64,000 nt of DNA from Haliotis cracherodii (GCF_022045235.1 NW_027266297.1:44950001-45014000), one strand, 5' to 3'; counted from the stretch's first letter, positions 600-60,001 are shown. Numbers and translations are program-made. The notes: generated from the letters alone by a model not told the origin.

Positions 600-3500
600 C
601 TGAACTTGATACCCTGCGACACGTCGTAACCAGCTGGTACCTTCCAGGTGAACATAACTGACGTCTTCTTAAATTCACTTGTGTGGGTGATGGAGTTCTA
701 GGAATGAAAACACAAAACACGATACCCATCTTTGTTCAACGTTTCATTCTCTGTATGTTTGTTGAATCGTTGAGGTCAGAAGAAATTTCAATAAGATTCA
801 ACCAAGCCTTTGAAAACGTCACTGTGCTTATTAGGGCAACCAAACGTTATTGTGCTTCTTAGGGAAACCATAGTCTGAACACGTTACTGTGCTTATTGTG
901 GCAACCATACTTTGAACAAGTTACTGTGCTTCGTAGGGCAACCAGAGTTTGAACACGTTACTGCGCTTCTTAGGACAACAATACTTTGAACACGTGAATG
1001 TGCTTATTAGGGCAACAATACTTTGAACAAGTTATTGTGCTTCTTATGGCAACCAGAGTTTGAACACGTGAATGTGCTTATTAGGGCAACAATACTTTGA
1101 ACACGTGAATGTGCTTATTAGGGCAACAATACTTTGAACAAGTTATTGTGCTTCTTAGGACAGCCAGAGTTTGAAAACGTATACGTTTGGACGTATATCT
1201 CTTATGGACAATGTTACACATTACTGTGATTCTTAGGGCAACCATACTTTGAAAATGTTACTGTGCTTCTTGAATACAATAATTGTTGCAAACATACCTT
1301 GGTGACATTTAAACAGTCCATGGTTTGAATAGTACCATCCGAGGCGGTATACTTGGCAAATGTCCCGGGCACTATGGCAGTGTCGGCGGTGGTACACTTG
1401 GTACAGCGGGCTTGGACCAGGAAACCCTCGAAGTATCCGTCGGTGGCAGTTGCGTTCAGGGTGACTGAAATATACAAGACACATACAGAGTAATACGAGA
1501 GAGGCACCATCGTGGCAACCAAAAGCTTTCAGGTTAACATTTGATCTGATTATTAAGTCAAATCTGCGTAGACAGGTAGAACTTTTACAAATCCAACTTT
1601 TTTGGTGGATACTAAAAAATATAATCAAAGTTTATTTTAGCTAGCATGAATATTATAAAATATTAAGCAAGTCTAAGCTTATAATTCCCTCTACTCCTGC
1701 TAAAGGTCCTGATTTTGGCTTGGGTACATTTAGTCTGTCTCACATTCGCTGAACCATATCATTTTCCCTTCAGCTAAGCCCTTCTGTAATGCAAATGCCC
1801 TTGAAGAATGTCTAGATTTTCCTTAGGAATCTCCCATCTCACTGGATCTCCGTTTCAATTAAGGCGTTAATCTAGGGTACATTCCTGTATACTGAAATGT
1901 TCCTGGGTTACATATCTGTAGTACCCGTGACTACACGACATCTTCAGTTCTACTCCCCCATGCGGTTGATCCACCAGCCTGCTCTTTTTTACCCTGTTCC
2001 CCACAGTATTGCGAACAAATGTGATTTGAGTGTCAAGTCGTCAGAGATCACATACGGTCGGGGTGTCAGAGAAGATGTAAATTTTGAACAGCCAGGTATG
2101 AAATGTTAGTCGGGTGGCCAGAGGTGATGTACGTAACTTTGAGTAGCAAGGGATAATACGACATAAAATGACAAACACTTAACCGTCAATTATGGGGCAG
2201 TTCAGTAGGCGCATACTGTGTATCTAGCTCCACAGAGAAAACACACTGTCAACATGTTTATCTTCATTCTACCATGAAAAAAACATTAAACTGTTAGCAA
2301 AGAGACTGGGTGAAGCGGCAAGGGACTAGTCGACTATTTTCAATGGGTTGCCGATCTGAATTAACGGACCACTGATGATAGACTTCGAAGAAAGAATTAA
2401 GGGGACCAGGTACAGAGTGAATGAAGGGGTCTCGGTATGGAGTGAATGAAGGGGCCCGGTATGGAGTGAAAGAAAGGGTCCTGGTATGGAGTGAATGAAG
2501 GGGACCCGGTATGGAGTGAATGAAGGGGTCCCGGTACGGAGTGAATGAAGGGGTCCTGGTATGGAGTGAATGAAGGGGACCCGATACGCAGTGAATGAAG
2601 GGGTCCAGGTATGGAGTGAATGTAGGGGTCTCGGTATGGAGTGAATGAAGGGGCCCGGTATGGAGTGAAAAAAGAGGTCCCAGTATGGAGTGAATGAAGG
2701 GGTCTCGGTTTGGAGTGAATGAAGGGGGCCCGGTATGGAGTGAATGAAGGGGGCCCGGTATGGAGTGAATGAAGGGGTCCTGGTATGGAGTGAACGAAGG
2801 GGTCCCGGTATGGAGTGAATGAAGGGGCCCGGTATGGAGTGAATGAAGGGGCCCCAGTATGGAGTGAATGAAGGGGTCCCAGTACGGAGTGAATGAAGGG
2901 GTCCTGGTATGGAGTGAATGAAGGGGTTCTGGTATGGAGTGAAGGAAGGGGGCCCGGTATGGAGTGAATGAAGGGGGCCCGGTATAGAGTGAACGAAGGG
3001 GGCCCGGTATGGAGTGAAGGAAGGGGTCCCGGTATGGAGTGAACGAAGGGGTCCCGGTATGGAGTGAATGAAGGGGGCCCGGTATGGAGTGAATGAAGGG
3101 GGCCCGGTATGGAGTGAATGAAGGGGCCCCAGTATGGAGTGAATGAAGGGGTCCCAGTACGGAGTGAATGAAGCGGTCTCGGTATGGAGTGAATGAAGGG
3201 GTTCTGGTATGGAGTGAAGGAAGGGGGCCCGGTATGGAGTGAATGAAGGGGGCCCGGTATAGAGTGAAGGAAGGGGGCCCGGTATGGAGTGAACGAAGGG
3301 GTCCCGGTATGGAGTGAATGAAGGGGGCTCGGTATGGAGTGAATGAAGGGGGTCCGGTATGGAGTGAAGGAAGGGGTTCTGGTATGGAGTGAATGAAGGG
3401 GGCCCGGTATGGAGTGAATGAAGGGGGCCCGGTATGGAGTGAATGAAGGGGGCTCGGTATGGAGTGAATGAAGGGGTCCTGGTATGGAGTGAATGAAGGG

Positions 3501-5061
3501 GTTCTGGTATGGAGTAAATGAAGGGGTTCTGGTATGGAGTGAATGAAGGGGGCCCGGTATGGAGTGAATGAATGAATGAATACGTATATTGCATCTAAAT
3601 TTCAATAAGACTCCACGGATATATTGATATTTACCTTTAACCATCTCTTTTGCGTCAAAATTGCCAACAGGAATAATTCGAAGCTATCTGATCTTATCTA
3701 TAATGTCTTTTGAGTAACGCTAAGGATAACACAAAAATCAACAGAACAAAGGACTGTATTTCTTGCATTTATGACACTTTTATTACAACGGGCAATAATA
3801 TCTTTTGAATTGACCAATTGTTTGTAAAAAAAATAAATGGCCTTATCATAATAATATCGAATAATCTTAGAGACCTATATATTATAAAAATGGAATTCTG
3901 ACCTGGAACATCGAGGAAAAGCAGATTCTACAAGGCAATTGTAAATTATCCACCAAATTCATCTGATAAATGGGAAACTAGTTTGGTTCGTTTCAAATTT
4001 TCTCTGATGAAGCAGGTAGAAGGCAGAACATTACTCTCATAAAAAGAAAATGTATATTATGTCTATCAAGTGGTACTGCAGATGAATATCATTATTTGTT
4101 TAATTGTGTGTATTTCAATGAAACAAGAAGTTTCCTATCTCCTTCTTACATGAACCTACTATCAGTTCTCTACATGACCAAGTTATTTCTAAGTAGGTAA
4201 AACATATAACTTCTGTCGCCACAATACATTTAACTTCACATTTAACATTCAGACTTGAGAATTGTAAACTTCATGAGAGAATAATACTTCAACATTCTGC
4301 TTTAATTTGAGAAGTGGAAATCAGGTGTTGAGATAAACAATTACACCTTGATCTTTTTATGAGACTAGCGGGAGTATCAGTTGTGCAGTCATAGATGAAA
4401 TATCATCTACAGACGAGTTCATAACCTGACAAAAGTTTTCTCATGTCAGTACAATGTTTTGACGCATATACTTCGTTACCATATGTTCTCGTGTTTTTTA
4501 GGTGAACAATTGACTCGCCTTTGCTTGTGTTTGTGACATGTGTGGGGCAGAATACGCTCACCTTTTCGCGAACACCAAAGTGATTCATAAAAGCACATGC
4601 CCATGATGTAGTCGGAATCGTACACTCGCCTCTACTACGAGAAGAGATTTCTTATTAATATGGAAAGGGTTTTGTTTGGCGAAAGGTTTGTCATGTGAGA
4701 ACAGTGTCATTCTCCTTCCTGAAAGCCACCAGAAGTTGTTATACTTTGCTCTAACGTGTAGGAATTCTTATGAATACGGAAAGGGTCACAGCCAAAAAGG
4801 TTTCCGTTTTCAGGAAACCTTCCAGATACCTTTCCACTTTTAATAGGGCCTTATCTTACAGAAATTACCTGTAACCATCCCTCCCTGTTTGATGGAATTT
4901 GTCTCTACGAAGAGAGAGTATGGCGGCGTTGAGTTCTGGGCGATGGTACCGTCATGTTGAGGAGTGAGGTTGATGCAGGCTGGAGGTCCTGCTGCTGTAG
5001 AGTAGCCCAGGACTAGAGCGGGCTGGACACAGGCGATAAGGAGGACGATGTACGCAGCCAT
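600..5061 (-). CDS. Reeler-domain protein, paralogue A (partial; last exon lies left of the window). Coding exons 5061-4869, 1464-1298, 697-600
   Basis: Manual splicing with canonical GT-AG sites (phases 1,0,2) gives MAAYIVLLIACVQPALVLG-YSTAAGPPACINLTPQH...PPYSL...VTLNATATDGYFEGFLVQARCTKC...PGTF...MDCLNVTK-NSITHTSEFKKTSVMFTWKVP...IKFR. This is a signal peptide plus the Reeler motifs C..(M/L).P.H, F.GF..QAR, C...N..TH and W.(A/V)P. Confidence 0.9.
808..1270. repeat. ~37-bp minisatellite (TTTGAACACGTTACTGTGCTTATTAGGGCAACCATAC-like) in intron 2 of gene A
   Basis: Direct tandem copies, ~11 units; not amplified in the paralogous intron of gene B. Confidence 0.85.
2400..3580. repeat. ~25-bp minisatellite (GGTATGGAGTGAATGAAGGGGGCCC) in intron 1 of gene A
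   Basis: ~47 tandem units ending in (TGAA)n; explains the spurious 415/422-aa ORFs. Confidence 0.95.
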
Positions 5062-5543: not shown

Positions 5544-5678
5544 GAGTGAGTGAGTATGGTTTTACACCACTCTTAGCAATAGTCAAGCAGTTTAACGGCG
5601 GGGGACACCAGAAATGTGGGGAATCGAACCCGGCTTTTTAGACCTGACGAGCGAACGCTTAGTCTACCCCACCGCCCC
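5544..5678 (-). mobile_element. Degenerate tRNA-derived SINE (family 1)
   Basis: Similar to 13013-13187 and 52393-52552, with internal deletions. Confidence 0.75.
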
Positions 5679-9000: not shown

Positions 9001-9114
9001 CCTTGGTGTAACTGAGAAACTTTTCAAAACTTTGTTAATCCCAACTCGCTCACTCAGCTGAGGGAGTTTTGTATTAACTGTGGAGGATAGAGAATGTTGT
9101 ATGTTCTTGAATAA

Positions 9115-15931: not shown

Positions 15932-16954
15932 CTACAGGAAGAGAGCAGCAATGATGGAGCCAATGACAACAGCCGTCGCCGATGCGGACCGTGAGCAGCT
16001 GCTGGTCGTGACGCTGATCTCGTCAGACATCACCGTGTTCCACCATGTTCGTAGATTCTGGACAACTGTAGCCCTGGAACATAATGGGACATTTACAAAT
16101 GGAGCGACATAAAGACTCGCCACCACATGTTTAGGTCATTAGGTCCAGCACAAGACATAGGTTGATTTTCTGTCCCAACAATCATGCTTATATGGCGCGC
16201 AGAATATTGTATGCATTAGCAGAATAGAGAGTTCGCGTTTCATTCTGGCACGGTAGAATTGAGATACGTAATTTTGATTTTGATTTTGAAATTTTCAATG
16301 TAATGGTAGAAAAGACGTTTATCTCTTATGGACAGTGTTACACAATCACTTATATTCATATTCATATTCAGTAATTTTCACAGCTTGTTTGACCTTTACG
16401 CCATTTTGGAATCTGTTTCGGCGGATAATCTAGCCTGGTTATTCTCTTACATTGACGTTATATATTTAACGTACCTGAACTCGATGCCCTGTGACACGTC
16501 GTAACCACCTGGTGCCTTCCAGGTGAACATAACTGACGTCTTCTCAGTTGCATTTGTGTGGGTGATGGAGTTCTGAGAATGAATGATGTGTCAACAGCTG
16601 GACGTGTTACGTGTAAAATTCGTAAACTTTCGAAAATATTACTATGATCCGGGCAACCGTACTTTATATACAATAACTGCGAACTTGAAAACCTACCTTG
16701 TCGCCACCTGCACAGTTTTTGGTTTGAATAGTACCATCCGAGGCGGTATACTTGGCAAATGTCCCGGGCACTATGGCAGTGTCGGCGGTGGTACACTTGG
16801 TACAGCGGGCTTGGACCAGGAAACCCTTGAAGTATCCGTTGGTTGCAGTTGTGTTCAGGGTGACTGAAATATACAACACACATACAGAGTAATACGAGAG
16901 AGGCACCATCTAGCAAACAAAAGCTTTCAGGTTAACGTTTGATCTGATTATTAG

Positions 16955-17036
<82 letters not shown>

Positions 17037-19169
17037 GAGAGGGGGTGGGGGGGTGGGGGGGCCTACAACAACAACAATGGTTCTGGTTGGTATCAAATGA
17101 AAGTGGAATTCATTTAAGTCCAGTGAAAAGTATTATCACATGGTCAGATTTTATGGACGTTGACTTTTTCAGATATTTTTAACAAAGCTCAATTTTAACA
17201 GCTCAATCGTTTAGGTGTATGAGTGTCAAGTCGTTAGAGATCACCTCCGGTCTGGAATTCCTTGGGGACACAACTTTAGGCAGGCAGCTATAACATGTAG
17301 ATCAAGAGACTGAAGTGAAGCGGCAAGCGCTTAGTCCACAGATAATAGTCTTTAGAGAAAGAAGAGCCCCCTATATGCTTGAATACTGTTTTTTAACACC
17401 AGTCTTCCTTACTCGCATATATGGCAGTCCTGGGAAGTGCAGCTGCATCTACCTGGTAAGACTACATGTAGGGGACTGATTAAACACGCCTTGCCTGGTT
17501 TAGTTTTACTCCCTGGGCACTATCATGACGTCATATCACTCATTGTGACACATAAGATATGTCATGACGTAACTGTCGTATTTTCACACATACAAGTACT
17601 TCTATCCTCAGCGGTGATGCAAACCAGTTGTTACACTAAGCGGTTTTTGTATGATTTGAAACCTCTGAATAGACCAATCAGAATTAAGAATTTTACAAAT
17701 TCATGATAGAATAATAATTCAATATTTCTGCAATCAGTCACCCTGCATAAATTTGAGAAGAGGAAATGAGGTGTTAAGATAAACGATTATACCTTGACCT
17801 TTTTATGAGACAAGCACGAGTAGCAGTTGGGGAGTCATGGATGAAATATTATCTACAGACGAGTACACACTTGCAGATCTGTTTCTTTAAGCGCACGAAT
17901 CGGAACATCTGATCGGATTGGCTAATTCGAAACAAGGCAAATTTGCCAACAAGTTTAACTTAAGCTTTAGGGATATCGATGATACGAAAATCGTTCAATG
18001 ACGGTCAAACAGCCAAGTGAACTGATTTACCCACCTGGGTCCACTTGCACAAAGCGATCTTAGCACTAAGACTATCGTTCACCTATGTTAAAGTATGGAA
18101 GTTACGAACGTCTTAGCGCTAAGATCGCTTTGTGCAAGTGGGCCCAGATCTTCTATGGGGACAAAAGAGGCTCGTGAAACTGTCTTATCTATTTCATATT
18201 TAAATGTTTGCATACGGATTCAGAGCGACAATAATTCTTATTATCGAACAATATTCCAGCAGCTCCAGCCTTTGGTGTCTACATTTCACAACTGTTGAGG
18301 TACAATCGATCATGCTCAGTATTGGAAGATTTCAAAGATCATCAAACGACTCTTGTTAAAAAAGCTTTCAAGAGGTATTATGGTAGACATGTGGAGAACA
18401 TTTCCAAATTTGACGCCTCAGTGACCAAATGGTGTCCGATGCCATTCCTTGTTTGGACTTGTACCACGTGTTCCTGTGTTGTTGTTTCTCAGGCATGTGT
18501 CTGTGACGGGAGCCCCTTTCGCGAACACCTGGTATGATCAGTATCATAAATAAACGATGCGTAACACAACGATGCTCTCTGCCATGACTAATTTTATAAG
18601 CTTTCAACATTCCATACCCTCCACAGTTATATAAAAAATACTCACCTTTTGGCAAACACATGGCATCAACACTATTTGATAGTGATTCATAAACACATGC
18701 TCATGATATATTCCAAGTCGTACAATGTCTTATGAATCAAAACATTATGGAAAGAGTGTGGTCGCTTTTATTGGCGAAATATTTGTTATGTGAATACAGC
18801 GTTATTCACCTTCGTTAAAACCCCCAGAAGATGTTTTGTTTTACTCGAACGTGCATGTAGCCTGACTGTATCGACATCTTGTTGTCAGATATTTACATAT
18901 GTGTAGGAGAACTACCACAAATGTTGATAACGTCGTAAACTCATAACGCTGAAGCATGTGACGCATGCGGACTTACCTGTAACCATCCCTCCCTGTTTGA
19001 TGGAATTTGTATCTACGAAGAGTGAGTATGGCGGCGTTGAGTTCTGGGAGATGGTACCGACATGTTGTGGAGTGAGGTTGATGCAGGCTTGATCTCCTGC
19101 TCCTGTAGGGTAGCCCAGGACCAGCACGGGCAGGACACAGGCGATAAGGAGGACGATGTACGCAGCCAT
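15932..19169 (-). CDS. Reeler-domain protein, paralogue B, 199 aa, signal peptide and probable GPI anchor. Exons 19169-18977, 16863-16697, 16572-16475, 16073-15932
   Basis: Four GT-AG exons (193+167+98+142=600 nt) splice into an intact ORF ending ...RATVVQNLRTWWNTVMSDEISVTTSSCSRSASATAVVIGSIIAALFL*. Confidence 0.93.
16958..17040. repeat. (GA)n microsatellite
   Basis: Direct observation. Confidence 0.95.
18035..18147. mobile_element. ~110-bp palindromic MITE (same family as 6501-6612)
   Basis: Long inverted repeats CTGGGTCCACTTGCACAAAGCGATCTTAGC / GCTAAGATCGCTTTGTGCAAGTGGGCCCAG. Confidence 0.85.
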
Positions 19170-31660: not shown

Positions 31661-31899
31661 GTATTCCTATATCTTCTAAGACGTGTTATCACATGTGATT
31701 CAGAAATAATACCCCACCGGAACCTCACCCCACACCCAATTCGTTTTTATGTACACAAAAAAAACCTGTGTCTCCGATAAGTCATAAGTCGATATATAGT
31801 TTTGAACTGTGTTGAAGAGGTTTCACTCCTAATGATAATACTAATATGAGGTAGGTAAACAGTAAATCGTGTCAGTGACCAACATATGTTCAGTATATC

Positions 31900-32485: not shown

Positions 32486-33473
32486 GATTTGTATATGCCT
32501 TTCAGTTAGCTTTAGTGTGTCTGATTGAACTAAGACATCCTCTGCAAACACATATTATGATTAGAGGTTATCTTATGGCAGTTTTCATACCATGTCCCAT
32601 ATCATCCCGAGACTACAATATCAGCTCGATATGGGTTGATACGGGGTATGGTATGCAAACTGCCAAATAATAACCTTTTTATCATATACTATAACATGAA
32701 ATTGTAAAATGTATACATTAATAAAAAACTATGTCCGTAAAAACATGTTCACCTTGTTTGGAAGACATAACCTTCCCGTGGAAAGGGCGTTAACTGAATA
32801 TAAGTCCAGTTTCCACCCTTGCCGAACTAGGATGAAATCTCCAGGCTCGATCGTAGCGCCAGCATGACTGACACAAACGCAATATTTGTATATATACTTT
32901 TATTGATATTGCTACACAGTTTCANNNNNNNNNNNNNNNNNNNNNNNNNNNNNNNNNNNNNNNNNNNNNNNNNNNNNNNNNNNNNNNNNNNNNNNNNNNN
33001 NNNNNNNNNNNNNNNNNNNNNNNNNNNNNNNNNNNNNNNNNNNNNNNNNNNNNNNNNNNNTTCAATATTCAGGTGTAGGTTTCGCACGTTGAAAACTAAG
33101 AAAATCCATGCATTTTTTTCATAAGAAAGATATATTTTCCTCAAACATTAAACTGATACGTCTAGATATAACTAAAAACAATGTACAAAGCAGCATTACA
33201 CTACTCAACGAAATTCCCAGTTATATACTTATGCGAAATAATTGCTATAATTCATTTTTTATGTGTTTGGTGTTTGTGTGTAAACTTTTATATTCCCAAA
33301 AGAAACTGAATTTCATTTTACAGGCCAAAGTGTTTTAGGGAGTGAATTTTAAAAACAAAAATGTTTAAATTAAAAGAGAATGGGTGTCTGCCCTGTCATT
33401 ATCCTTCTTGCTTTAAACTAGCGTAGAGCATAGTGTAGGTCGGAAGCTTTTAAAGCAGCATAATCAGTTGGAA

Positions 33474-35728
33474 TTATGCGAGCAGTGAAGAGACGACGAC
33501 ACTAAAACTGATAATGAGAGCCAGCAATGGAGCAGCTTGAGTGGTAGAGTTGGGTGCAGCGGTGGTGACGGTGATCTCTTGGGACAGCACGTTAGTCCAC
33601 CAGGTCGCTTTCACTTGGACAATAGTAGCCCTGGAATATACAGGTCATTTGAAACACGTCTAGCGATCAGCCTGTACTGCGTCACCAAGGTAAAGGGAAA
33701 TCACTGGACCTGACACATCCCTGAGAAGGAACTATTTCCCATGCTGTTGTCTTTCTTGCCATTACAAAAGACGGAATGCGATCAGCGGGTTTGGGAATAC
33801 AGAATATCATACCATGTGTCCTACAGAATATCATACCATGTGTCCTACAGAATATCATACCATGTTTCCTACAGAATATCATACCATGTTTCCTGCAGAA
33901 TATCATACCATGTGCCCTACAGAATATCATACCAAGTGTTCTACAGAATATCATTTCAAGTTTCCTACAGAATATCATACCATGTGTCCTACTGAATATC
34001 ATACCAAGTTTCCTACAGAATATCACACCATGTGTCCTACAGAATATCATACCAAGTGTCCTACAGAATATCATACCAAGTGTCCTACAGAATATCATAC
34101 CAAGTGTCCTACAGAATATCATATAAAGTTTCCTACAGAATATCATACCAAGTGTCCTACAGAATATCATACCAAGTGTCCTACAGAATATCATACCAAG
34201 TGTCCTACAAAATATCATACCATGTGTCCCACAGAATATCATACCAAGTGTCCTACAGAATATCATACAAGTGTCCTACAGAATATCATACCAAGTGTCC
34301 TACAGAATATTATACCAAGTGTCCTACAGAATATCATACCAAGTGTCCTACAGAATACCATACCATGTGTCCTACAGAATAGCATACCATGTGTAACACG
34401 GAATAGCCTACAAAGTGTCAATCAAAACATTACAAGTGTCCTACAGAATATCGTGTCTTACAAGATATCATAAGCGTTCTACAGAGTATCCTGTCCTAAT
34501 GAAAATCATGACTATCACATCAAGTGTCCTAATGAAAATCATGACTATCACATCAAGTGTCCTACGGAAAATCATGACTATCACATCAAGTGTCCTACGG
34601 AATATCATGACTATCACATCAAGTGTCCTACGGAATATCATGACTATCACATCAAGTGTCCTACGGAAAATCATGACTATCACATCAAGTGTCCTACGGA
34701 ATATCATGACTATCACATCAAGTGAGTTTCTGCTATGTATATGCACACATCTGAGTGGGTTGCACAGAAATCACATACCTGAACTGAACGCCTTGGGAAA
34801 CATCATAATCCGAGGGTGCTGTCCAGGTGAACATGACAGTTGTCTTCATACTACTACTGGTATGAGTCATCGAATTCTGAAAATAGAATACACCAAAATG
34901 CATGAAATAGTTGTGTTAAACTGCAATACGGATGACTTATCAGTGGATACTGTCAAAAACGCCATGGCTATCATCATCATTTTACAATCTATAGGTCCTC
35001 TTAAATGAGCCCTGTGATATAGATGCTAGGATTCAGTTCATAAAGAATGAGTTCAAGCTACAGACAAACCTTGGCAATATTTGCGCAGTCCATGGTTTTA
35101 GTATCATCCGCGGCGGTATACTTGGCAAAAGTCCCGGGCACTATGGCAGTGTCGGCGGTGGTACACTTGGTACAGCGGGCTTGGACCAGGAAACCTTTGA
35201 AGTATCCGTTGGTGGCAGTTGCGTTCAGAGTAACTGAATAATTAGGAAATGTCACCTGCAATTAGCCTGTAAGTTATTTTACNNNNNNNNNNNNNNNNNN
35301 NNNNNNNNNNNNNNNNNNNNNNNNNNNNNNNNNNNNNNNNNNNNNNNNNNNNNNNNNNNNNNNNNNNNNNNNNNNNNNNNNNNNNNNNNNNNNNNNNNNN
35401 NNNNNNNNNNNNNNNNNNNNNNNNNNNNNNNNNNNNNNNNNNNNNNNNNNNNNNNNNNNNNNNNNNNNNNNNNNNNNNNNNNNNNNNNNNNNNNNNNNNN
35501 NNNNNNNNNNNNNNNNNNNNNNNNNNNNNNNNNNNNNNNNACCATCCCGCCTTGTTTGATGGATGTGGTATCCGCTGTGAGGGTGTAAGGATGTGGTGAT
35601 GTGTTTGCGGTGGTTCCGTCGTGATGAGGCTTGAGATCCAGGCAAGCAGAGGCACCAGCTCCATCTTGGTAACCCAGAACCATCACCGGCAACACACAGA
35701 CGATGAAGAGGAATACATGCACGGCCAT
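33474..35728 (-). CDS. Reeler-domain protein, paralogue C, ~203 aa, probable GPI anchor. Exons 35728-~35536 (end in N gap), 35233-35070, 34876-34779, 33630-33474
   Basis: MAVHVFLFIVCVLPVMVLG-YQDGAGASACLDLKPHH...; GFLVQARCTKC; NSMTHTSSSMKTTVMFTWTAP; ATIVQVKATWWTNVLSQEITVTTAAPNSTTQAAPLLALIISFSVVVSSLLA*. All visible splice sites are canonical. Confidence 0.9.
33795..34722. repeat. 24-bp minisatellite (GTCCTACAGAATATCATACCAAGT) followed by a related 33-bp array, intron 3 of gene C
   Basis: ~25 units to ~34400, then ~7 units of GTCCTACGGAATATCATGACTATCACATCAAGT at 34490-34722. Confidence 0.93.
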
Positions 35729-49359: not shown

Positions 49360-52310
49360 AAACAAGTAGCGTGACGTCGAGAAGACAGTTGGAGTGACGT
49401 TGAGGAGACAGGGAGTGTGACGCAGAGGAGACAGGTGCGTGACGTTGAGGAGACAGGTATCGTGATGTCGAGAAGACAGGTACCGCGACGTCGAGAAGAC
49501 AGGTATCATGACGTCGAGAAGAAGGTATTGTGACGCGAGAAGACAGGTAGCATGACGTCGAGAACACAGGTATCGTGACGTCGAGAAGACAGGTATCGTG
49601 ACATCAAGAAGACAGGTGGTATGACGCTGAGGAGACAGGGAGTGTGACGTTGAAGAGACAGGGAGTGTGATGTTGAAGAGACAGGGAGTGTGACGTCGAG
49701 AAGACAGGTATCGTGGGGTTGAGGAGACATGGAGTGTGACGTTGAGGAGACAAGTATCGTGGGGTTGAGGAGACATGGAGTGTGACGTTGAGGAGTCGGG
49801 GAGTGTGACGTCGAGAAGACGTATCGTGGGGTTGAGGAGGCATGGAGCGTGACGTTGAGGAGACAAGTAGCGTGGGATTGAGGAGACATGAAGTGTGACG
49901 TTGAGGAGACAAGTAGCGTGGGGTTGTGGAGACATGGAGTGTGACGTTGAGGGGACATGGAGAGTGACGTTGAGGAGACATGGAGAGTGACGTTGAGGAG
50001 ACATGGAGAGTGACGTTGAGGAGACAAGTATCGTGGGGTTGAGGAGACATGAAGTGTGACGTTGAGGGGACATGGAGAGTGACGTTCAGGAGACATGGAG
50101 AGTGACGTTGAGGAGACAAGTAGCGTGTGGTTGAGGAGACAGGTATCGTGGGGTTGAGGAGACATGAAGTGTGACTTTGAGGAGATATGGAGAGTGACGT
50201 TGAGGAGACATGGAGAGTGACGTTGAGGAGACAAGTAGCGTGTGGTTGAGGAGACATGGAGAGTGACGTTGAGGAGACAGGTATCGTGGGGTTGAGGAGA
50301 CATGGAGAGTGACGTTGAGGAAACATGAAGTGTGACGTTGAGGAGACATGGAGAGTGACGTTGAGGAGACAAGTAGCGTGACGTTGAGGAGACAAGTAGC
50401 GTGACGTTGAGGAGACATGGAATGTGACGTTGAGGAGACATGGAGAGTGACGTTGAGGAGACAAGTAGCGTGACGTTGAGGAGACAGGTATCGTGGGGTT
50501 GAGGAGACATGAAGTGTGACGATGAGGGGACATGGAGAGTGACGTTGAGGAGACATGGAGAGTGACGTTGAGCAGACAAGTAGCGTGGGGTTGAGGAGAC
50601 ATGGAGAGTGACGTTGAGGAGATATGGAGAGTGACGTTGAGGAGACAAGTAGCGTGTGCTTGAGGAGACATGGAGAGTGACGTTGAGGAGACATGAAGTG
50701 TGACGTTGAGGAGACATGAAGTGTGACGTTGAGGAGACGAGTAGCGTGTGGTTGAGGAGACAGGTATCGTGGCGTTGTGGAGACATGGAGAGTGACGTTG
50801 AGGAGACAAGTAGCGTGACGTTGAGGAGACAAGTAGCGTGACGTTGAGGAGACATGGAGAGCGACGTTGAGGAGACAAGTAGCGTGACGTTGAGGAGACA
50901 AGTAGCGTGGGGTTGAGGAGACAGGTATTGTGGAGTTGAGGAGACATGAAGTGTGACGTTGGGGAGACAAGTAGCGTCACGTTGAGGAGACATGGAGAGT
51001 GACGTTGAGGAGACATTGAGAGTTACGTTGAGGAGGCATGAAGTGTGACGTTGAGGAGACATGGAGAGTGACGTTGGGGAGACAAGTAGCGTGGGGTTGA
51101 GGGGACATGGAGGGTGACGTTGAGGAGACATGGAGAGTGACGTTGAGGAGACATGGAGAGTGACGTTGGGGAGACAAGTAGCGTGACGTTTAGGAGACAT
51201 GGAGAGTGACGTTGGGGAGACAAGTAGCGTGGAGTTGAGGGGACATGGAGGGTGACGTTGAGAAGACAGGTATCGTGGAGTTGAGGAGACAGGTGGCGTG
51301 ATGTCGAGATGACAGGTATCGTGGGTTTGAGGAGACAGCTGGCGTGATGTCGAGAAGATGTAGAGGGATGTCGAGAGAACGGGGGATGGAGGGATGTCGA
51401 GAGGACGGGGAGAGGAATGTCGAGAGGACGGGGGATAGAGGGATGTCGAGAGGACGGGGGGTAGAGGAACGTCGAGAGGACGGAGGTTAGAGGGATATCG
51501 AAAAGACGGGGGATAGGGGGATGTCGAGAGGACCAGGGATAGAGGGATGTCGAGAGGAAGGGGAGAGGAATGTCGAGAGGACGGGGGTTAGAGGGATGAA
51601 GAGAGGACGGGTAGGGGATGTCGAGAAGACGGGGATAGGGACATCGAGAAGAAGGGTAGGGGATGTCGAGAGGACGGGTAGAGGGACATCGAGAGGACGG
51701 TTAGGGGATGTCGAAAAGACGGGCATAGGGACATCGAGAAGAAGGGTAGGGGATGTCGAGAGGACGGGTAGAGGGACGTCGAGAGGACGGGTAGGGGATG
51801 TCGAGAAGACGGGTAGAGGGACGTCGAGAGGACGGGTAGGGGATGTCGAGAAGACGGGTAGGGGATGTCGAGAGGACCAGGGATAGAGGGATGTCGAGAG
51901 GAAGGGGAGAGGAATGGGGTTAGAGGGATGAAGAGAGGACGGGTAGGGGATGTCGAGAAGATGGGGATAGGGACATCGAGAAGAAGGGTAGGGGATGTCG
52001 AGTGGACGGGTAGAGGGACATCGAGAGGACGGTTAGGGGATGTCGAGAAGACGGGGATAGGGACATCGAGAAGAAGGGTAGGGGATGTCGAGAGGACGGG
52101 TAGAGGGACGTCGAGAGGACGGGTAGGGGATGTCGAGAGGACGGGTAGGGGATGTCGAGAGGACGGGTAGAGGGACGTCGAGAAGACGGGGAGAGGGACA
52201 TCCAGAAGAAGGGTAGGGGATGTCGAGAGGACGGGTAGCTGGACGTCGAGAGCACGGGTAGGGGTCGGCTAGAGGACGGGTAGCTGGACGTCGAGAGGAC
52301 GGGTAGGGGG
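49360..52310. repeat. Compound ~23-bp purine-rich minisatellite (GTGACGTTGAGGAGACATGGAGA grading into GATGTCGAGAGGACGGGTAGAGG)
   Basis: Tandem units with a variant switch near 51350; explains the 290-564-aa ORFs. Confidence 0.95.
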
Positions 52311-52392
52311 ACTTCGATATGTTACGCATATTTTGTGTGTGAACTGCAACGGGTTGTGAACAGTAATATTTCAAGAAATAGTTGAAATAGCT

Positions 52393-52742: not shown

Positions 52743-53769
52743 CGAGAGCTGGCTGAAAAGTTCTAAGCCTAACTGTGTAAGACCCGTACCAAGTCGATGG
52801 TTTTCATTTATTCTCCACATAGTCCAATTCCAGGTTTACACACAGTTGCCAGTGATGCTGCAAGGCCTGGATGCCGGTCAAGAAGAAATTGTCTTCCGCC
52901 ACCCTAAAAAAGTCACTCACAGTAATAATGACGTCATCATTACTATGAAAATGGCGACCGGCTAGTTTTGGGAAACAGGTGGAAGTCTGACGGGGCCAAA
53001 TCGGGTGCACAAGGAGGATGGTCAATGAGATCGAAGCCACAATCATGGATCGCTGACATGGCAACCACCGATTTATGAACAGGAGCATTGTCTTGGTGGA
53101 ACAGGACTCCTTTAGTCAGCATTCCCCGTCGCTTAGCTTTGATAGCTTCACGCAACTGTCTCAGTAGGTCAGCATGATATCTTCCATTGATAGTCTGACC
53201 TTTTTCAAGATAGTCAATCAGCAGAATACCCTTGGAATCCCAAAAGACCGAAGCCATCACCTTTCCAACAGAAGGAACCGACTTTGCTTTTTGGGGGGGC
53301 TGGTGATTCCGGGTGTGCTCTCATGAGAGATGCCCACAACACTGGCAATATGTCGAGTGGTCAATCGTCAATCAGCCATCACCATGTCATGCACCCGGGT
53401 AATGTTTTCCGGAATATTTGCTGTTGGAGGCCTTCCTGGACGCGGGTCATCGCCAAGGCTCTCTCTGCCACGCTTGAATTCCGTAGCCCACTACAGAGAA
53501 AAGGAAGGGGTATCATCCCCTAACATGGAGGCCATGTCAGCATGTATCTGTGTTGAAGTTGATGACTGCCCTATAGCCAGTTTTGTCCATTTCTGGTGAT
53601 TTCAATGGGTAGGTTCACAAGATGGTCTGGTACAAAGACAATAATAACACTACAATTGCAGTTCTTATGTCTATGATTCATTAAATGATTGTACTTGTTG
53701 GTGGCAAAAATTTGTTTCAATCCGATTGAGATATCCCACTTAGGCTTAGAACTTTTCAGCCAGCCCTCG
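52743..53769 (-). mobile_element. Internally deleted mariner transposon (pseudogenised transposase)
   Basis: ~30-bp TIRs CGAG(A/G)GCTGGCTGAAAAGTTCTAAGCCTAA with TA at both sides; protein MASVFWDSKGILLIDYLEKGQTING..Y...LFHQDNAPVH...HPP.APDLAPSDFHLF; frameshifts. Confidence 0.95.
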
Positions 53770-54013: not shown

Positions 54014-54665
54014 CTAAGATATTAAAGACAACATAAGCTTAAAAGTGCGCTTAAGGACGTAGACCTTCAAAGCGTTTTGCTTATTCTGTACAGTTATCTC
54101 CTGATTGCTAGCTGCATCAGTGAGACCCTTGTTTGCTATATCTAAATGAGGATTCCTAATACATGAATCAATGGTAAATCTCATCCTAATCATCAACGAC
54201 AGGGCTCTCTTGTCAGTTACTCCGTACGCCCTATGGACATGCAAATAGAGCATGGCCAACTCCCTGCAGCGTTTACAAACCACGGAGCAAATACGTCCAT
54301 GGTGACAATAAAAAAAGATATAAAAATATATAGCTAACTTTATTGATCGCATATAACATTTGATAAATTGTTTCTATTAATAGGTGACGATGCAAACATC
54401 TGTTTGATAGAAGTGGATAATGGTTGGATTGTTCAGTCAAAGGGTTCAGTCGATTATTGCCTCATCTTCGCCAGTATGCAGTTCATTCAATATCAACTTG
54501 TAATGTAAGATAATATAAACATAACAGGTAGTTTTGTTTTGATCAGTAATCCTAAATGAAATCAATAAAATGTCTCTTGAGATTGTATCTACTTTCAGTT
54601 TAGCATCGGTGATTTAGTTGTATGACACTGTTAACGTTGATATATCACTCCGCCCTTGTGTTGTC

Positions 54666-57600
54666 CTATGCATTGAAATGCCGCAGTAATTGAGCAGTGA
54701 AAGCAAGAAACAACACAGCCCTCTCCTGACCGTGGTTTGTCGCTGTTGAACCATATGGATAGACGGATATGGTCTGTCGGGCAGGACAATAGCTGTACAT
54801 TCTAGTGCTATTCTGACTTGAATCATAAACAGTGTTACTCTGCACATTGGCCCAGAAGATGTCGCGCCTCTTCACTATGGTTGCCCTGCAATTGTAAAAA
54901 AATCATTTTCTGAGTACTCACGGAATTGGATGTTAGAACGTTCAGAGCTGTGACATGAACTGCCTCAAAACTGAACAGCCCGAGATACACAACTTCCCGC
55001 ACACGTGGTGGTATCCAGGTTATTAATTCCACCCGTTATGTGATACACGAGCAGATAGGTAGAATTGCCTTCCCCTATACAAATGTTGGTAAGAACAATC
55101 CTTTATCAGATGTTGTCCTCGTGTGTGTTAATACCCGAGTTATTGACTCACAGTGGTCGGACTTCTGCCTTTCTCACAGCAGTATGTCACGCATATATAT
55201 ACGGTACAGTCACGCATATATACGGTACAGTCACGCACATCTGAGGCTTGTATATGCAGGAATACTCTGCATTTTCAAGAAATAATAATTTAACGTATTT
55301 TGCAAACTCTACATTGGCTTTCGCTGAAACAGGGCAAGTGTTTTGGACAGGGACAGTGGGGTCTCTAGCAAGCGAAAACTCATAAAAAGAAATGAAAACG
55401 ACACAAGATTACCTCAGTCGAGATGAAATCATAACTGGGTCCCTATTTCTAGTTCACTAAAAGGAGGATATATTTTTAAGTACATTTACTAAACACGTAG
55501 GTTTCACTCGAACAGATATCGTTGATACTATGCACACTAGTTGATGAAGGTTACACAACTCATCAAGTTGTGCATACTCTAAAAACACTTAACACAGGAT
55601 CTCAGGATCTAAGGATCCATGTGAACATTAAGCCAAAATAGGTTTCCAGCACCCTATGTTTGCCAAAGGAAAGCAGACTACAATGTGCGACCTGGCAGAT
55701 TGTGTGTCATCCTACCCGATGGTGTGGACCTTGATCGCGTGATCTACCTCTGCTGTGTATGGCCGAGACAATTTCGGACCGTGATCCAACTGAAATAGTC
55801 ACTCCGATGATATGCAGCACTTACTGAAAGTAGACGTCTCCTCCATTGGGGTTCCTCCAGGTAACAGTGACTGATGTCTTCCTACTGGGGCTGGTGTGGG
55901 AAACAGCGTTCTGCAATATCAGGAACAGTCACTTTAACCACTCAAGTGTTTCCATTTCAACCATACAAGTAAAATTAAATAATAGACATCAGCCCAAACA
56001 TGTTTTTGAATACTCGATTTCTTAACAATGTCTTCATTTAGCTGTGATGATTACAGCAGCATGCAAGAGTCGTTCCAACTTCTAAACATGTTAAAACCTC
56101 TAACGGAAAAGAAACGCTTTCAGGACGTAAAACACGTTGCACAGTGCAATAGGTACTTCACTGCCGTAGTAAATTAAAGAATAGGTATGAACAATGTTTG
56201 TATTTGTATGGAAAATGTTAGAACTGGCGCATTTCAGACGTTATGGAAATGAAATTTGGGGATCTTCATTCAGAGAAAGTATAGAAAAAGTCCAAAGATT
56301 TTTTTCAAGAGATATCGATTAATCAGTAGTAAAGCATCCTCTAATACTGTTCTTGGTGAGTTTCATTGTTATCATCTAAGTGTTAATTATTTCAGTGTAT
56401 TGGTGTAGGCTAATACGCATGAATTCCAATGGACTTCCACTTGTTTGTTATCAAAAGATGATAATGGTAGGGTTAATTTTGCATCTCATGTGAGAATGCT
56501 TTAGTTTAAACAAGGCTTTGATTATGCTTGGATATCCGGATTGTGGAGATATACGTTACTTTATGGAAATAAGAGAAAATGTATTGACATTGATGTGCAG
56601 AACGGGAGTCAAAGTATTAGCAAGTCTATGTTCTTAAACCATTAATTGTCTTATAAAGCACTGCTAGAAACTGATAAAGATCAATTAGACTATTGGCGAA
56701 ATTTGGATGTTTAGCACATGATTAAAACATACAAAAACAGCGTTTTAGCAAACCGTGACCTCTCTAACTGGCTGAACCAGGTGCAAGGTCACATTTTAGT
56801 TATATTAGCAGGTTGTGTCTTATCTTTTCAGGTTATTGCAGAAAATCCAGTTTAAATGTAGATTAGCGTAAAGGAGAAAAACACTGAGGATTCAGACAGT
56901 GGTTGTGGCAAAACCATGCTTCAGGTTTCATATGTATCTTTATTCCACAATAACAATCATGTACACGTTCTTACGTCTTGAAATAACATAAGCGTCTACA
57001 TTGCTTCCCCCAGTCATTCGTTGATTTGCAATACGTACATTTGAGATCGGCCCCATGCATGTCATGCTCTGGGTGTTGGAGTCCAAAGGGCCAACAAAGA
57101 AACCCCTGGCAACGGTTGAGGACATGCAGTCAGCGCTATGTGCCTGGAGGAAAAACCCTTGAAAGTATGGATGATCCGTGTTCGTTGTTGATATGGTAAC
57201 TGAAACAATCATTATCAGCCACAATGTAGACGGTGTCATATGAAATCATTACATTTTATATAATTAGCCATCTTGATTTCGCGGGACTACATGTACACAA
57301 GAGTTTTTATATGAAATAATGCAGTAGGCCATAATATTTTATAATATTACATCATGTAATGTTTAGTGTTATCTTTGCGAAAAACCAGTGCGATAAATTT
57401 TATGTCACGACCCGAGAAATATGCAAATGAGTACAGCGAGCAGGAACTACTTGTGGGCCCCGTACATCGATGCAGTGTCTGCTTGATCAGTAACTGATTG
57501 ACTAACATTTGCAACAAGTTTAGGTGGGAGTTTCCTGATGCGTGGGTCATTCTGTAGACAGCCCTGACTGTAAATAATTTGGTGCTATATGATAAACGGG

Positions 57601-60001
57601 TCTGTTCACGCATACATTGTATTCATTTTAACCATTAAACGGTTTCTAAAGTTACTTCTTGGAGTGACAAAACGTCGATCATTTTAGAATGATGTTATAT
57701 GATAAAAGAAGTATTACATTCGTGTATTTCTGTATGGTAAATATCATACGTTAGACATAAGTATAAGTTTGACGGTTTAAAATAAGCGTAAACAACAACA
57801 AACAAAAAAACAAATAAATAAAACGAAAAAGAACCCCAAACAAATCTCTTGTCAATCTCATTAAAAATAGATCTCAGTGCTCGCTACCGCTAAACAAAGA
57901 TCTGAGGACATCCTGTCACAGCTTACGTCAGCACGACCATTCACCCGACCTTCAGCAAGTACGAAGTGGTCTCAATCTCATTAAAAGCAGTCGCTAAACA
58001 AAGATCTGAGGACATCGCATTAAGCGTCACGTCAAAACGACCTATCATCCAACCAATCAGCACTTACCAGATCATGAAAGTGTTTTCTAATCATGCAACC
58101 ACGAAATATTTAACATTGAGTATTCCGAACGACAGTTACGGGTTTTATGATCATATCAATACAATCTAGGTCATCTATAAGCCATTCCAGAATATTCTTC
58201 TTATCAGTTTTAATTTTTTTAATTGAGAATACGTCAAAATATGTTTCGAAGCGAAGTAACCAGTTTGAAAGTAGTGTCGTAAAGCTCGAGAAAACTGCCT
58301 TCTGATTGGCTAATGTCGATTTCTTGTCGGTCATTTCATTGGTCGGTCAAAATTCGCGAAAGGTCGTGCTGACCTGACCCGTAATGGGATGTCCTCAGAT
58401 CTTTGATTAGCGGTAGCGAAAACTCAGACCTGATTTTGATGAGATTGGAAGTGGTCTCTAATTATCCTATCTTGAAAGTGTCAACGCTGTACGACTGTTT
58501 CCTTCAAAATCACCGTCTATATCTCGCTTGAATTGGATAAACATTTGAAACGGATGAGACTTTCCAATAGCACGCGGGAAGTACTGCCATACAATCTCGG
58601 CCATCTATTAGACATTTCAGAATTTTCTTCTGTTCAATTTTCAAATTTTGAATTGAGAGCTCTTTCAAAATTTTTCTCAAGGCAACGTTTAGAATGAAAG
58701 CCGCCATTTTGAACTAGCACCGTAAAGCTCAAGAATTATGCTTATTGATTGGTTAATGTTGACGTCGTCTTACTCATTTCATTAGTCGGTCAATGTTCGC
58801 GAAAGGTCATTCTGTCGTAACCCTTAATGGGATGCCCTCAGATCTTTGCGTTGGCGTAGCGTGTACAAAGATCTGATTTTAATTAGATTGATTTCAACGG
58901 TGATCAACTTCAACGGTGATTTTGTATGCCGAATTTTAAAAATAACCGTACAGCTGTGTACTAGCCAATAAGACACACAATCTCTGGATGGCGTGTAATA
59001 AAATGTCCTATCAACTTAACTAGGCAAGATTAGTGTATATGATAGGTGATAAAGTGGCTACCGCTCACCGGTAATGTTGTCGTCGGTGGGTGTGTAGCTA
59101 GGGTTGTCAACAGTGATCACATAGGGCGGGGCACTCATCTGGGCATCAGCCCCGTGGTGAGGGAACATGTCTCCACACGCCGACAGAGGAGGCCCGGTGC
59201 TGTATCCCTGTGTCAGATGCAGGGAACAAATGGCCAACACAACTGCAACAATCTGAAATAGATTCATCATTTAAAATGTGACCATATTACTGATCTAAAA
59301 ACGGCAAACAAATCCGTCCGAAGACAAAATTACAGAAACGTGTAGATACACGAAACAATGCATTGAGGTTTCATCGTGTTAAACAGAAAAGAGACATCTC
59401 TTCGAGGAACAAGTGTTTCTACTGATAAATTGCCAAACCGTGCTTAGAAGAACAACGTCATGAGGTTTAAGCTGGTCAACCAGTCCAGACTTAATGGTTA
59501 CCAGGCAAGAGTAGCACAGCCCTGACGTATTGCTAAGTAACTGTTTTAAGTATTACAACACTGAGTTGACATACGTCACACCTATATGGTTAGGGTTCCA
59601 ATTATTTTATTTGTCTTACATATACAAACAACATCAATATTCATGTCAATTACATAAATTCATGTTTGCTTGTTGTTTAACGCCGCACTCAGCAACAATC
59701 CAGCTATAGACGGCGGTCTGTAAATAATTGAGTCTGGACCAGACAATCCAGTGATTGACATCATGAGCATCGACCCACGCAATTGGGATACGATGACATG
59801 CATCACCCAAGTCAGCATTCACGGGTCTATAAATTCATGTACAAAACAAATGTAAGTTAGTCGCACTGGACTCGGAGTTGTTTGTAGAATACCTCATTAA
59901 GTAATCAGCCGAAACACTGACGTGAGTTAGATATATGTTATAGCTTTTACGAATATTTTTCACTTACATTTAAATAACCATAAAACATGTACCTGAAACA
60001 T
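54666..60001 (-). CDS. Reeler-domain protein, divergent paralogue E, ~219 aa. Exons 60001-59993 (MFQ; alternative start ATG at 59270), 59252-59069, 57199-57039, 55910-55825, 54885-54666
   Basis: IVAVVLAICSLHLTQG-YSTGPPLSACGDMFPHHGADAQMSAPPY; YFQGFFLQAH...GFF...MTC; NAVSHTSPSRKTSVTVTWRNP; QATIVKRRDIFWANVQS. Same intron phases as A-D. Confidence 0.88.
57853..58890. mobile_element. Nested AcademH-like non-autonomous elements with RecQ-helicase fragment; inner copy 57973-58447
   Basis: Two left ends CAATCTCATTAAAA...CAAAGATCTGAGGACATC and two matching right ends; inner copy flanked by 10-bp TSD GAAGTGGTCT; ORF 58510-58707 LKIEQKKILKCLIDGRDCMAVLP resembles a RecQ N-terminus. Confidence 0.7.
59665..59828 (-). 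mobile_element. SINE (family 3) fragment
   Basis: TGTTTAACGCCGCACTCAGCAA...CTGTAAATAATTGAGTCTGGACCAGACAATCCAGTG. Confidence 0.8.

What the first reader, a model, noticed from the sequence alone, without database searches (positions are those of the whole stretch)
600..60001. Tandem array of five stand-alone, probably GPI-anchored Reeler genes: candidate diversified surface/mucosal defence family
Seen: five co-oriented genes with identical exon phases, each encoding a signal peptide plus one Reeler domain. B, C and D end in a Ser/Thr spacer plus hydrophobic tail with no cytoplasmic segment. The ORF track shows these genes only as fragments. Known: single-Reeler proteins act in insect immunity (nodulation, 'putative defense protein'), and Reeler is the N-terminal domain of FRRS1/SDR2 ferric-chelate reductases, F-spondin and reelin. 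Inference: a lineage-specific expansion of membrane-tethered Reeler proteins with graded ages (A/B recent, C/D older, E basal), possibly for immune recognition or extracellular-matrix/shell function. The cluster continues left of the window.
Basis: partly seen in the sequence, partly recalled or inferred. Interest (0 to 1): 0.8.

Follow-up and report, generated by a model that had tools for sequence, protein, structure and literature searches.

The report
Abalone cluster of single-Reeler surface genes
This stretch of the black abalone genome holds a real tandem cluster of small genes that each encode a secreted, probably membrane-tethered protein with one Reeler domain; public annotation already lists them as 'putative defense protein 3', and nobody has studied what they do.

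Summary
The window (Haliotis cracherodii, C34:44.95-45.01 Mb) carries five co-oriented minus-strand genes, A-E. All introns are GT-AG with phases 1/0/2. Each gene encodes a signal-peptide-like N-terminus and one complete Reeler domain (PF02014).

- **Public models:** B, C and D match RefSeq proteins of 199-203 aa exactly. D scores E 2e-29 over the full Reeler model, and its predicted fold matches the F-spondin reeler domain.
- **Transcripts:** Gene E is confirmed by a spliced RNA contig with exactly the predicted junctions. Two related species show the same junctions. The contig ends in 3' UTR.
- **Not a fusion gene:** No DOMON or cytochrome b561 exon lies within about 130 kb, although other Reeler loci in this genome do have DOMON exons.
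- **C-terminal tails:** A-D end in a Ser/Thr spacer and a hydrophobic tail with no cytoplasmic part, which is GPI-like. E's tail is weak.
- **Gaps:** One gap cuts the end of C exon 1. The other is downstream of C.
- **Cluster size:** The cluster has at least nine genes over about 100 kb.
- **Ages:** They are graded (A/B dS 0.10; B/C/D 0.8-0.9; E/F saturated).

GPI anchoring and a defence role remain inferences. This is a new member of a known kind and is already annotated.

The parts
4869..5061 (-). Gene A exon 1 (ATG at 5061; signal peptide plus start of Reeler; donor ACAG|gt, phase 1)
   Evidence: 91% identical to H. rufescens P0008
1298..1464 (-). Gene A exon 2 (Reeler HMM 34-87)
600..697 (-). 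Gene A exon 3 (phase 2 donor). Exon 4 with the Ser-rich spacer and hydrophobic tail lies outside the window, 195-345 bases to its left (locus L004)
18977..19169 (-). Gene B exon 1
   Evidence: 100% to RefSeq P0015
16697..16863 (-). Gene B exon 2
16475..16572 (-). Gene B exon 3
15932..16073 (-). Gene B exon 4 coding part with stop: end of Reeler, Ser-rich spacer, hydrophobic tail
35541..35728 (-). Gene C exon 1, cut at its 3' end by the gap 35283-35540 (last few bases and donor not readable)
35283..35540 (.). Assembly gap at the exon 1/intron 1 border of gene C. Not filled; continuity across it is unknown
35070..35233 (-). Gene C exon 2
34779..34876 (-). Gene C exon 3
33474..33630 (-). Gene C exon 4 coding part with stop (spacer plus hydrophobic tail)
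32925..33060 (.). Assembly gap about 415 bases downstream of gene C's stop codon; touches no coding exon
48079..48268 (-). Gene D exon 1
   Evidence: 100% to RefSeq P0001
47107..47273 (-). Gene D exon 2
46827..46924 (-). Gene D exon 3. Its donor lies in the first unit of a 75-bp tandem repeat (46499-46837)
44962..45109 (-). Gene D exon 4 coding part with stop. Its acceptor follows a 40-bp repeat array (45108-45391)
59993..60001 (-). Gene E first coding mini-exon (ATG TTT CAG|gtacat, phase 0). The exon extends at least about 70 bases further 5' as UTR
   Evidence: fits the 70 unplaced 5' letters and the shared TTTCAG of the RNA contig
59069..59252 (-). Gene E second coding exon (rest of signal peptide, start of Reeler)
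   Evidence: joint 57199/59069
57039..57199 (-). Gene E Reeler exon (HMM 34-90)
   Evidence: joints 55910/57039 and 57199/59069
55825..55910 (-). Gene E Reeler exon (HMM 87-119)
54400..54885 (-). Gene E last exon: coding 54669-54885, stop 54666-54668, then 3' UTR running past 54400. Its tail is weakly hydrophobic

Best explanation
This is part of a tandem cluster of at least nine genes in the black abalone, Haliotis cracherodii. Each gene encodes a small protein of about 200-220 aa.

**Architecture.** Each protein has an N-terminal signal peptide, one complete Reeler domain (a beta-sandwich with a CTKC motif in A-D), a short Ser/Thr-rich spacer, and a C-terminal hydrophobic tail with no cytoplasmic residues. 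In two left-flank members the spacer is a long Thr/Pro-rich mucin-like stalk.

**Most likely mechanism (inferred).** The proteins enter the secretory pathway. In A-D and F, the tail is exchanged for a GPI anchor, or at least holds the protein in the outer membrane leaflet. The Reeler domain is then displayed on an epithelial or haemocyte surface. There it binds carbohydrate polymers of microbes or of the animal's own matrix, as the secreted single-Reeler proteins of arthropods do.

**Origin (shown).** The family grew by repeated tandem duplication: an old E/F split, then C/D/B at middle age, then A/B recently. All of these events predate the H. cracherodii / H. rufescens split.

**What is shown and what is inferred.** Gene structure, domain, fold, splicing of E, stand-alone status and the order of duplications are shown. 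Signal-peptide cleavage, GPI anchoring, ligand and biological role are inferred.
For: - **Domain:** Pfam Reeler is found exon by exon and over the full-length RefSeq protein of gene D, 29-164 against HMM 1-131, E 2e-29.
- **Public models:** RefSeq models are identical to my exon models for B, C and D.
- **Splice sites:** All introns are GT-AG with phases 1/0/2.
- **Transcript of E:** A 1045-nt RNA contig of run X1 differs by one letter and has joints 54884/55824, 55910/57039 and 57199/59069. Two related organisms show the same joints.
- **No fusion partners:** There is no DOMON or cytochrome b561 exon near the cluster, while DOMON exons are found next to Reeler exons at C34:20.78-20.85 Mb and at three C80 loci.
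- **Fold:** The eight best Foldseek matches are F-spondin reeler domain chains, E 4e-8 to 4e-7. The next match is about 1000-fold weaker.
- **Tails:** The tails reach Kyte-Doolittle 2.45-2.81 over 13 residues at the extreme C-terminus, with at most four residues after that stretch, none acidic or basic (His in A). The same tail type occurs in a tick homologue, P0014.
- **Conservation:** Orthologues exist in H. rufescens, H. rubra and H. asinina.
- **Ages:** dS grading supports the order of duplications.
- **Analogues:** PcReeler binds bacteria and polysaccharides and inhibits biofilm in crayfish gills (PMC10149183). LvReeler1-3 and the tick gut protein PIXR are listed.
Against: - No GPI or signal-peptide predictor was available, so both are read from hydropathy and small-residue patterns only.
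- E's tail is weak (KD 1.67, ending in RHFNA).
- No tissue or challenge expression data could be read, because run identities are coded. One of two samples of the same organism had no E transcript.
- RNA was laid only on gene E. A-D rest on RefSeq models.
- A/B dN/dS of about 0.9 could mean relaxed constraint rather than diversification.
- The structure model is of modest confidence (mean pLDDT 59; core 64-83).
- Stand-alone Reeler proteins in gastropods are also known as shell matrix proteins, so a defence role is not the only reading.
Confidence: 0.7

Rival explanations
1. They are shell or extracellular-matrix proteins. The Reeler domain organises matrix in the mantle or shell field, as in Crepidula SMP1 and the Reeler-only proteins in the Haliotis laevigata shell proteome. 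The hydrophobic tail would only be a transient membrane hold before release.
For: - Crepidula SMP1 is signal peptide plus Reeler plus a low-complexity tail, and is expressed only in shell-forming cells (PMC12277549; PMC9365450).
- The H. laevigata shell matrix contains Reeler-only entries described as 'Reeler, TM, IDR; S' and 'Reeler, IDR; T' (PMC6003135).
- Left-flank genes G and I have long Ser/Thr/Pro stalks.
Against: - The peptide context of the shell protein Tri_61496 (GFLVTLLT) does not match the invariant GFLVQARC of A-D or the flank genes.
- SMP1's tail is Gly/Gln-rich and has no terminal hydrophobic stretch.
- No expression data tie this cluster to the mantle.
Confidence: 0.2
2. They are membrane-proximal accessory subunits of iron or redox metabolism, related to the Reeler module of ferric-chelate reductase 1 (FRRS1/SDR2), as some RefSeq names suggest.
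For: RefSeq names several orthologues 'putative ferric-chelate reductase 1'. The genome has true Reeler+DOMON genes elsewhere.
Against: The proteins have only a Reeler domain. No DOMON or cytochrome b561 exons lie near the cluster. The name is an automatic transfer based on the shared Reeler domain.
Confidence: 0.04
3. Some copies are decaying duplicates with no function of their own. In particular the young pair A/B may be under relaxed constraint, and E has a degenerate tail.
For: A/B dN/dS is 0.92. E's tail is weakly hydrophobic. An orphan inverted exon-4 relic lies at about 11.4 kb. The spacers are full of minisatellites.
Against: - All frames are open and all splice sites are intact.
- A and B each keep an orthologue in H. 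rufescens.
- E is transcribed and correctly spliced in three organisms.
- Older pairs show dN/dS of 0.30-0.39.
Confidence: 0.06

Closest known systems
Arthropod single-Reeler immune proteins (PcReeler of Procambarus clarkii, LvReeler1-3 of Litopenaeus vannamei, PIXR of Ixodes scapularis, insect Noduler / 'putative defense protein')
   Same: Both have a signal peptide and one Reeler domain with no other domain. The RefSeq name 'putative defense protein 3' is transferred from this group. A tick homologue, P0014, aligns over 92% of gene D's protein at 32% identity and also ends in a hydrophobic tail.
   Different: The arthropod proteins are described as secreted, whereas A-D here carry a GPI-like tail. 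The abalone genes form a tandem cluster of at least nine. No binding or immune data exist for the abalone proteins.
Gastropod shell matrix protein SMP1 (Crepidula) and the Reeler-only entries of the Haliotis laevigata shell proteome
   Same: Both are gastropod proteins with a signal peptide, one Reeler domain and a low-complexity C-terminal region.
   Different: SMP1 has a Gly/Gln-rich disordered end with no terminal hydrophobic stretch. The H. laevigata peptide I checked does not fit this cluster. Expression of this cluster in shell-forming tissue is unknown.
F-spondin / reelin N-terminal reeler domain (PDB 2ZOT, 2ZOU, 3COO)
   Same: They share the fold: these are the top eight Foldseek matches, with TM 0.63-0.69 relative to the target and 19-22% identity.
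   Different: In vertebrates the reeler domain is the N-terminal module of large multidomain matrix proteins. Here it is the whole ectodomain.
Ferric-chelate reductase 1 (FRRS1/SDR2): Reeler + DOMON + cytochrome b561
   Same: Both have an N-terminal Reeler domain. Some orthologues carry this RefSeq name.
   Different: The DOMON and cytochrome b561 parts are absent from the proteins and from the locus.

Membership tests
Reeler domain family (Pfam PF02014) | Match to the Reeler HMM above the gathering score over the whole domain | tested here: met
   P0001 (gene D): 103 bits, E 2e-29, HMM 1-131/131. Exons of A-E give colinear partial matches. Genome-wide six-frame hits fall at all five genes.
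Reeler domain family (Pfam PF02014) | Reeler beta-sandwich fold as in the F-spondin reeler domain | tested here: met
   The AlphaFold2 model of P0001 has core pLDDT 64-83 and mean 59. The top eight Foldseek PDB matches are 2ZOT/2ZOU/3COO at E 4e-8 to 4e-7. Sequence search of PDB alone found nothing.
Stand-alone single-Reeler secreted proteins ('putative defense protein', Noduler/PcReeler/PIXR type) | Signal peptide plus one Reeler domain and no other globular domain | tested here: met
   Proteins are 199-203 aa with Reeler as the only significant Pfam hit. N-termini are hydrophobic with a small -3/-1 pattern (the signal peptide is read by eye, not with a predictor).
Stand-alone single-Reeler secreted proteins ('putative defense protein', Noduler/PcReeler/PIXR type) | Binds microbial polysaccharides or bacteria; induced by infection | not testable with these tools
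   Known only for the arthropod proteins (PMC10149183). No abalone data were found.
Ferric-chelate reductase 1 (FRRS1/SDR2) | DOMON domain and cytochrome b561 membrane domain after the Reeler domain | tested here: not met
   No DOMON or b561 exon hit in C34:44.90-45.03 Mb at E<=10. The same search finds DOMON exons beside Reeler exons at other loci, which serves as a positive control. The RNA contig of E ends in 3' UTR.
GPI-anchored proteins | N-terminal signal peptide, and a C-terminal hydrophobic stretch at the very end with no cytoplasmic residues, preceded by a polar spacer and small residues | tested here: inconclusive
   A-D have KD(13) 2.45-2.81 at the extreme C-terminus, with at most four residues after that stretch, none acidic or basic (His in A), and Ser/Ala/Cys-rich spacers. 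F has 2.35. E has only 1.67 and ends in RHFNA. No dedicated predictor (NetGPI, PredGPI) was available.
GPI-anchored proteins | Release by PI-PLC, or detection of the anchor | not testable with these tools
   Needs an experiment.
Gastropod shell matrix Reeler proteins (SMP1 type) | Found in the shell proteome, or expressed in shell-forming cells | tested here: inconclusive
   The one H. laevigata Reeler-only peptide context I could read (Tri_61496) does not match this cluster. No expression-by-tissue data were readable.

The most novel reading that the evidence does not exclude
The co-oriented paralogues, which share exon phases, may be used combinatorially. Read-through transcripts would splice exon 1 of one gene to exons 2-4 of the next, giving in-frame chimeric GPI-tethered Reeler receptors. 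A nearly nucleotide-identical tract in exon 2 (the CTKC loop) would be kept uniform by gene conversion. Together these would make a surface recognition repertoire larger than the gene count.

The hints are these:
- H. rubra RefSeq isoforms P0012 and P0010 share exon 1 but carry the 3' exons of different paralogues.
- H. rufescens P0013 has an alternative first exon.
- Synonymous divergence in exon 2 is only 0.16-0.27, against 0.5-0.86 in the other exons.
Probability: 0.1. Interest if true: 0.6.

Novelty: new member of a known kind. Interest (0 to 1): 0.3.

Why it matters
Single-Reeler proteins control gut and gill microbes in ticks and crustaceans. In molluscs they have been noted only as shell matrix components. 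A conserved cluster of at least nine probably membrane-tethered Reeler genes in abalone gives a defined candidate family for mucosal or haemocyte surface recognition. From my own knowledge, black abalone populations collapsed from a bacterial gut disease (withering syndrome), so such a family could be relevant there. The value is that of a well-delimited, testable gene family. It is not a new kind of system, and the gene models already exist in RefSeq.

Tried and rejected
- **Fusion gene with DOMON or cytochrome b561:** rejected. There are no such exons near the cluster, and the transcript of E ends after the last Reeler exon.
- **ATG at 59270 as E's start:** rejected. The RNA contig leaves the genome at 59258. 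An upstream mini-exon, ATGTTTCAG|gt at 59993-60001, explains both the shared TTTCAG and the 70 unplaced letters.
- **Identity with the H. laevigata shell Reeler-only proteins:** the peptide context does not fit.
- **5' exons of A-D and F:** a search by similarity between upstream regions gave nothing usable. For F several ATG mini-exon candidates remain open.
- **Sequence search of PDB:** no hit. Only the fold search found the reeler domain.
- **Not run:** the large representative protein search and the protein atlas, on the operators' cost advice and because Pfam settled the family. The statement 'lineage-specific' is therefore untested outside Haliotis.
- **Joined models:** Full-length searches used RefSeq proteins that the word search returned.
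Full report
**Where the window lies.** The window is G000:C34:44950001-45014000 of a 1.18-Gb assembly. A word search with an open frame containing exon 3 of gene D returned a 200-aa RefSeq protein, 'putative defense protein 3 [Haliotis cracherodii]', on a contig of the same length as C34. The organism is therefore the black abalone, a vetigastropod.

**The gaps, tested first.** The window has two runs of N, at 32925-33060 and 35283-35540. The second gap starts within the last few bases of exon 1 of gene C and removes its splice donor. Only 49 bases of intron lie between the gap and exon 2. Whether the two sides are continuous, and how long the intron is, cannot be known from the window. Strand, order and phase on both sides agree with the paralogues. 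The first gap lies about 415 bases downstream of C's stop codon and touches no coding sequence. I did not fill either gap.

**Gene structure.** All genes lie on the minus strand.
- Genes A-D have four coding exons. Exon lengths are 193/167/98/151 for A, 193/167/98/139 for B and 190/167/98/145 for D. For C the readable part of exon 1 is 188 bases, followed by 164/98/154.
- Every intron is GT..AG. The phases are 1, 0, 2 in all of them, and also in E and in a sixth gene, F, right of the window.
- A's last exon lies 195-345 bases left of the window.
- In A-D an AG immediately precedes the ATG, which suggests a non-coding 5' exon. I could not locate it.
- E has one more coding exon than A-D: ATG TTT CAG|gtacat at 59993-60001, joined in phase 0 to 59252.

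**Domain and fold.**
- Exon by exon, Pfam Reeler (PF02014) matches HMM positions 1-35, 34-85/90 and 83-112 in colinear order in all five genes.
- The RefSeq protein of D is identical to my exon model. It matches the whole HMM, 1-131, at E 2e-29, with no other significant domain.
- An AlphaFold2 model from a shallow alignment is of modest quality, with mean pLDDT 59 and core 64-83.
- Its eight best Foldseek matches in the PDB are all chains of the F-spondin reeler domain (2ZOT, 2ZOU, 3COO; E 4e-8 to 4e-7). The next match is about a thousand times weaker.

**Are the genes stand-alone?**
- Six-frame searches of the whole genome with DOMON and cytochrome b561 found no exon in C34:44.90-45.03 Mb at E up to 10.
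- The same searches do find DOMON exons just downstream of Reeler exons at C34:20.78-20.85 Mb and at three loci on C80. The absence here is therefore meaningful.
- RefSeq models of B, C and D (XP_071118169.1, XP_071118010.1, XP_071119798.1) are 199-203 aa.

**RNA evidence.** I laid four runs on 54400-59400, which is gene E, the copy with no public model in hand and no tandem repeats.
- Run X1 has a 1045-nt contig that differs by one letter from the window.
- That contig has joints 54884/55824, 55910/57039 and 57199/59069, all GT..AG on the minus strand. These are exactly the predicted exon borders.
- The contig runs through the stop codon and past 54400 without any further joint.
- Runs of two other organisms, X2 and X3, which differ by 2-4%, show the same joints.
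- A second sample of organism A (X20) has no E transcript.
- The runs' kind is a guess ('RNA?'), but intron-free contigs with canonical borders are transcripts.

**N- and C-termini.**
- The N-termini are hydrophobic (KD over 10 residues 2.1-3.2) with V-x-G before a Tyr. This is signal-peptide-like, but I read it by eye.
- A-D end with a Ser/Thr/Ala/Cys-rich spacer and a hydrophobic stretch (KD over 13 residues 2.45-2.81) at the extreme C-terminus, with nothing after it that could be cytoplasmic.
- F is similar (2.35). E is weak (1.67, ending in RHFNA).
- A tick homologue of 232 aa, P0014, has the same layout with a Pro/Ser-rich stalk.
- This pattern is that of GPI-anchor signals, but no predictor was available.

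**Extent of the cluster.** Reeler exons continue on both sides of the window.
- F lies at +65 to +72 kb.
- G (minus strand) lies at about -8.6 to -11 kb. Its last exon has a Pro/Thr/Ser stalk and a hydrophobic tail.
- H is on the plus strand at about -19 to -15 kb.
- I (minus strand) lies at about -24 to -28 kb. Its last exon encodes a poly-Thr stalk of about 130 residues and a hydrophobic tail.
- That makes at least nine genes in about 100 kb.
- The spacers between genes are filled with minisatellite arrays.

**Ages and selection.** I used Nei-Gojobori counts made exon by exon and then pooled.
- A/B: dS 0.10, dN 0.09, ratio 0.92.
- B/C, B/D, C/D and A/D: dS 0.8-0.9, ratio 0.30-0.39.
- E and F are saturated, at 38-39% amino-acid identity with each other and with B.
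- A tree of database proteins puts D with orthologues from four Haliotis species (100/100) and places C as its sister (85/98).
- A and B each have a H. rufescens counterpart.
- Exon 2 stands out. Its synonymous difference is only 0.16-0.27 in pairs whose other exons show 0.5-0.86. A tract of about 85 nt encoding GFLVQARCTKC..PGTFAKY is almost identical in A-D. This points to gene conversion or to constraint at the nucleotide level.

**What is known.**
- Single-Reeler proteins are established antibacterial or microbiota-shaping factors in crayfish gills (PMC10149183), in shrimp and in the tick gut.
- In gastropods, Crepidula SMP1 (signal peptide, Reeler, low-complexity tail) is a shell matrix protein of shell-forming cells.
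- The H. laevigata shell proteome lists Reeler-only entries. The peptide I could check does not fit this cluster.
- I found no paper on these abalone genes and none on GPI-anchored Reeler proteins.

**Verdict.** The best reading is a conserved Haliotis cluster of stand-alone, probably membrane-tethered Reeler proteins. By analogy their function is surface binding of microbial or matrix polysaccharides. A shell-matrix role is the main rival. The genes are already annotated automatically, and the protein type is known, so this is a new member of a known kind, of moderate to low interest. The inter-paralogue isoforms in RefSeq and the exon-2 tract are the more unusual leads.

**Limits.**
- The large protein search and the atlas were not run.
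- The gaps were left as they are.

Noticed in passing
window 1344-1426, 16745-16827, 35115-35197, 47155-47237 (exon 2 of A-D): A tract of about 85 nt encoding GFLVQARCTKC..PGTFAKY is almost nucleotide-identical in four paralogues. Synonymous difference in exon 2 is 0.16-0.27, against 0.5-0.86 in the other exons. This suggests gene conversion or nucleotide-level constraint.
   Followed up: partly
proteins P0010, P0012 (H. rubra) and P0013 (H. rufescens): RefSeq 'isoforms' share exon 1 but carry the 3' exons of different paralogues, or have an alternative first exon without a signal peptide. This is either inter-paralogue splicing or an annotation artefact.
   Followed up: partly
L002/L003, about 24-28 kb and 8.6-11 kb left of the window: Further Reeler genes have much longer stalks. 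One last exon encodes about 130 residues of almost pure Thr/Pro before a hydrophobic tail. Another encodes a Pro/Thr/Ser stalk.
   Followed up: partly
window 11352-11807 (+): An inverted, isolated exon-4-like piece (..SSRATVVVNETHWWDN..) runs in frame into the 48-bp minisatellite. It is probably a relic of a lost or rearranged copy.
   Followed up: partly
window 46499-46837 and 45108-45391: The donor and the acceptor of gene D's last intron each sit at the edge of a tandem repeat (75 bp x 4.5 and 40 bp x 7) that repeats the splice-site sequence. The RefSeq model uses the first donor and the last acceptor.
   Followed up: no
window 57740-58900 (intron of gene E): Depth from contigs at 90-95% identity is very high, in the thousands, in all four runs and three organisms, with many joints and loose ends. 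This looks like a transcribed high-copy repeat or transposable element.
   Followed up: no
window 52943-53260 (-): An open frame matches the mariner-type Transposase_1 family (E 4.9e-16). It is a fragment.
   Followed up: partly
window 2394-3572, 9114-9756, 11517-14233, 24828-28929, 29201-31663, 33798-34724, 41726-43601, 49342-52317: Every spacer between the Reeler genes, and one intron of C, holds long minisatellite arrays with periods of 22-53 bp. The same 48-bp family occurs twice. These arrays produce the long spurious ORFs of the ORF list.
   Followed up: no
window 60125-60137 (-): A TATA-like ATCTATATAATCG lies about 60-70 bases upstream of the inferred 5' end of gene E's first exon.
   Followed up: no
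genes A and B: The young pair has dN/dS of about 0.9, with non-synonymous above synonymous differences in exon 2. This means relaxed constraint or diversification, and the counts are too small to tell which.
   Followed up: partly
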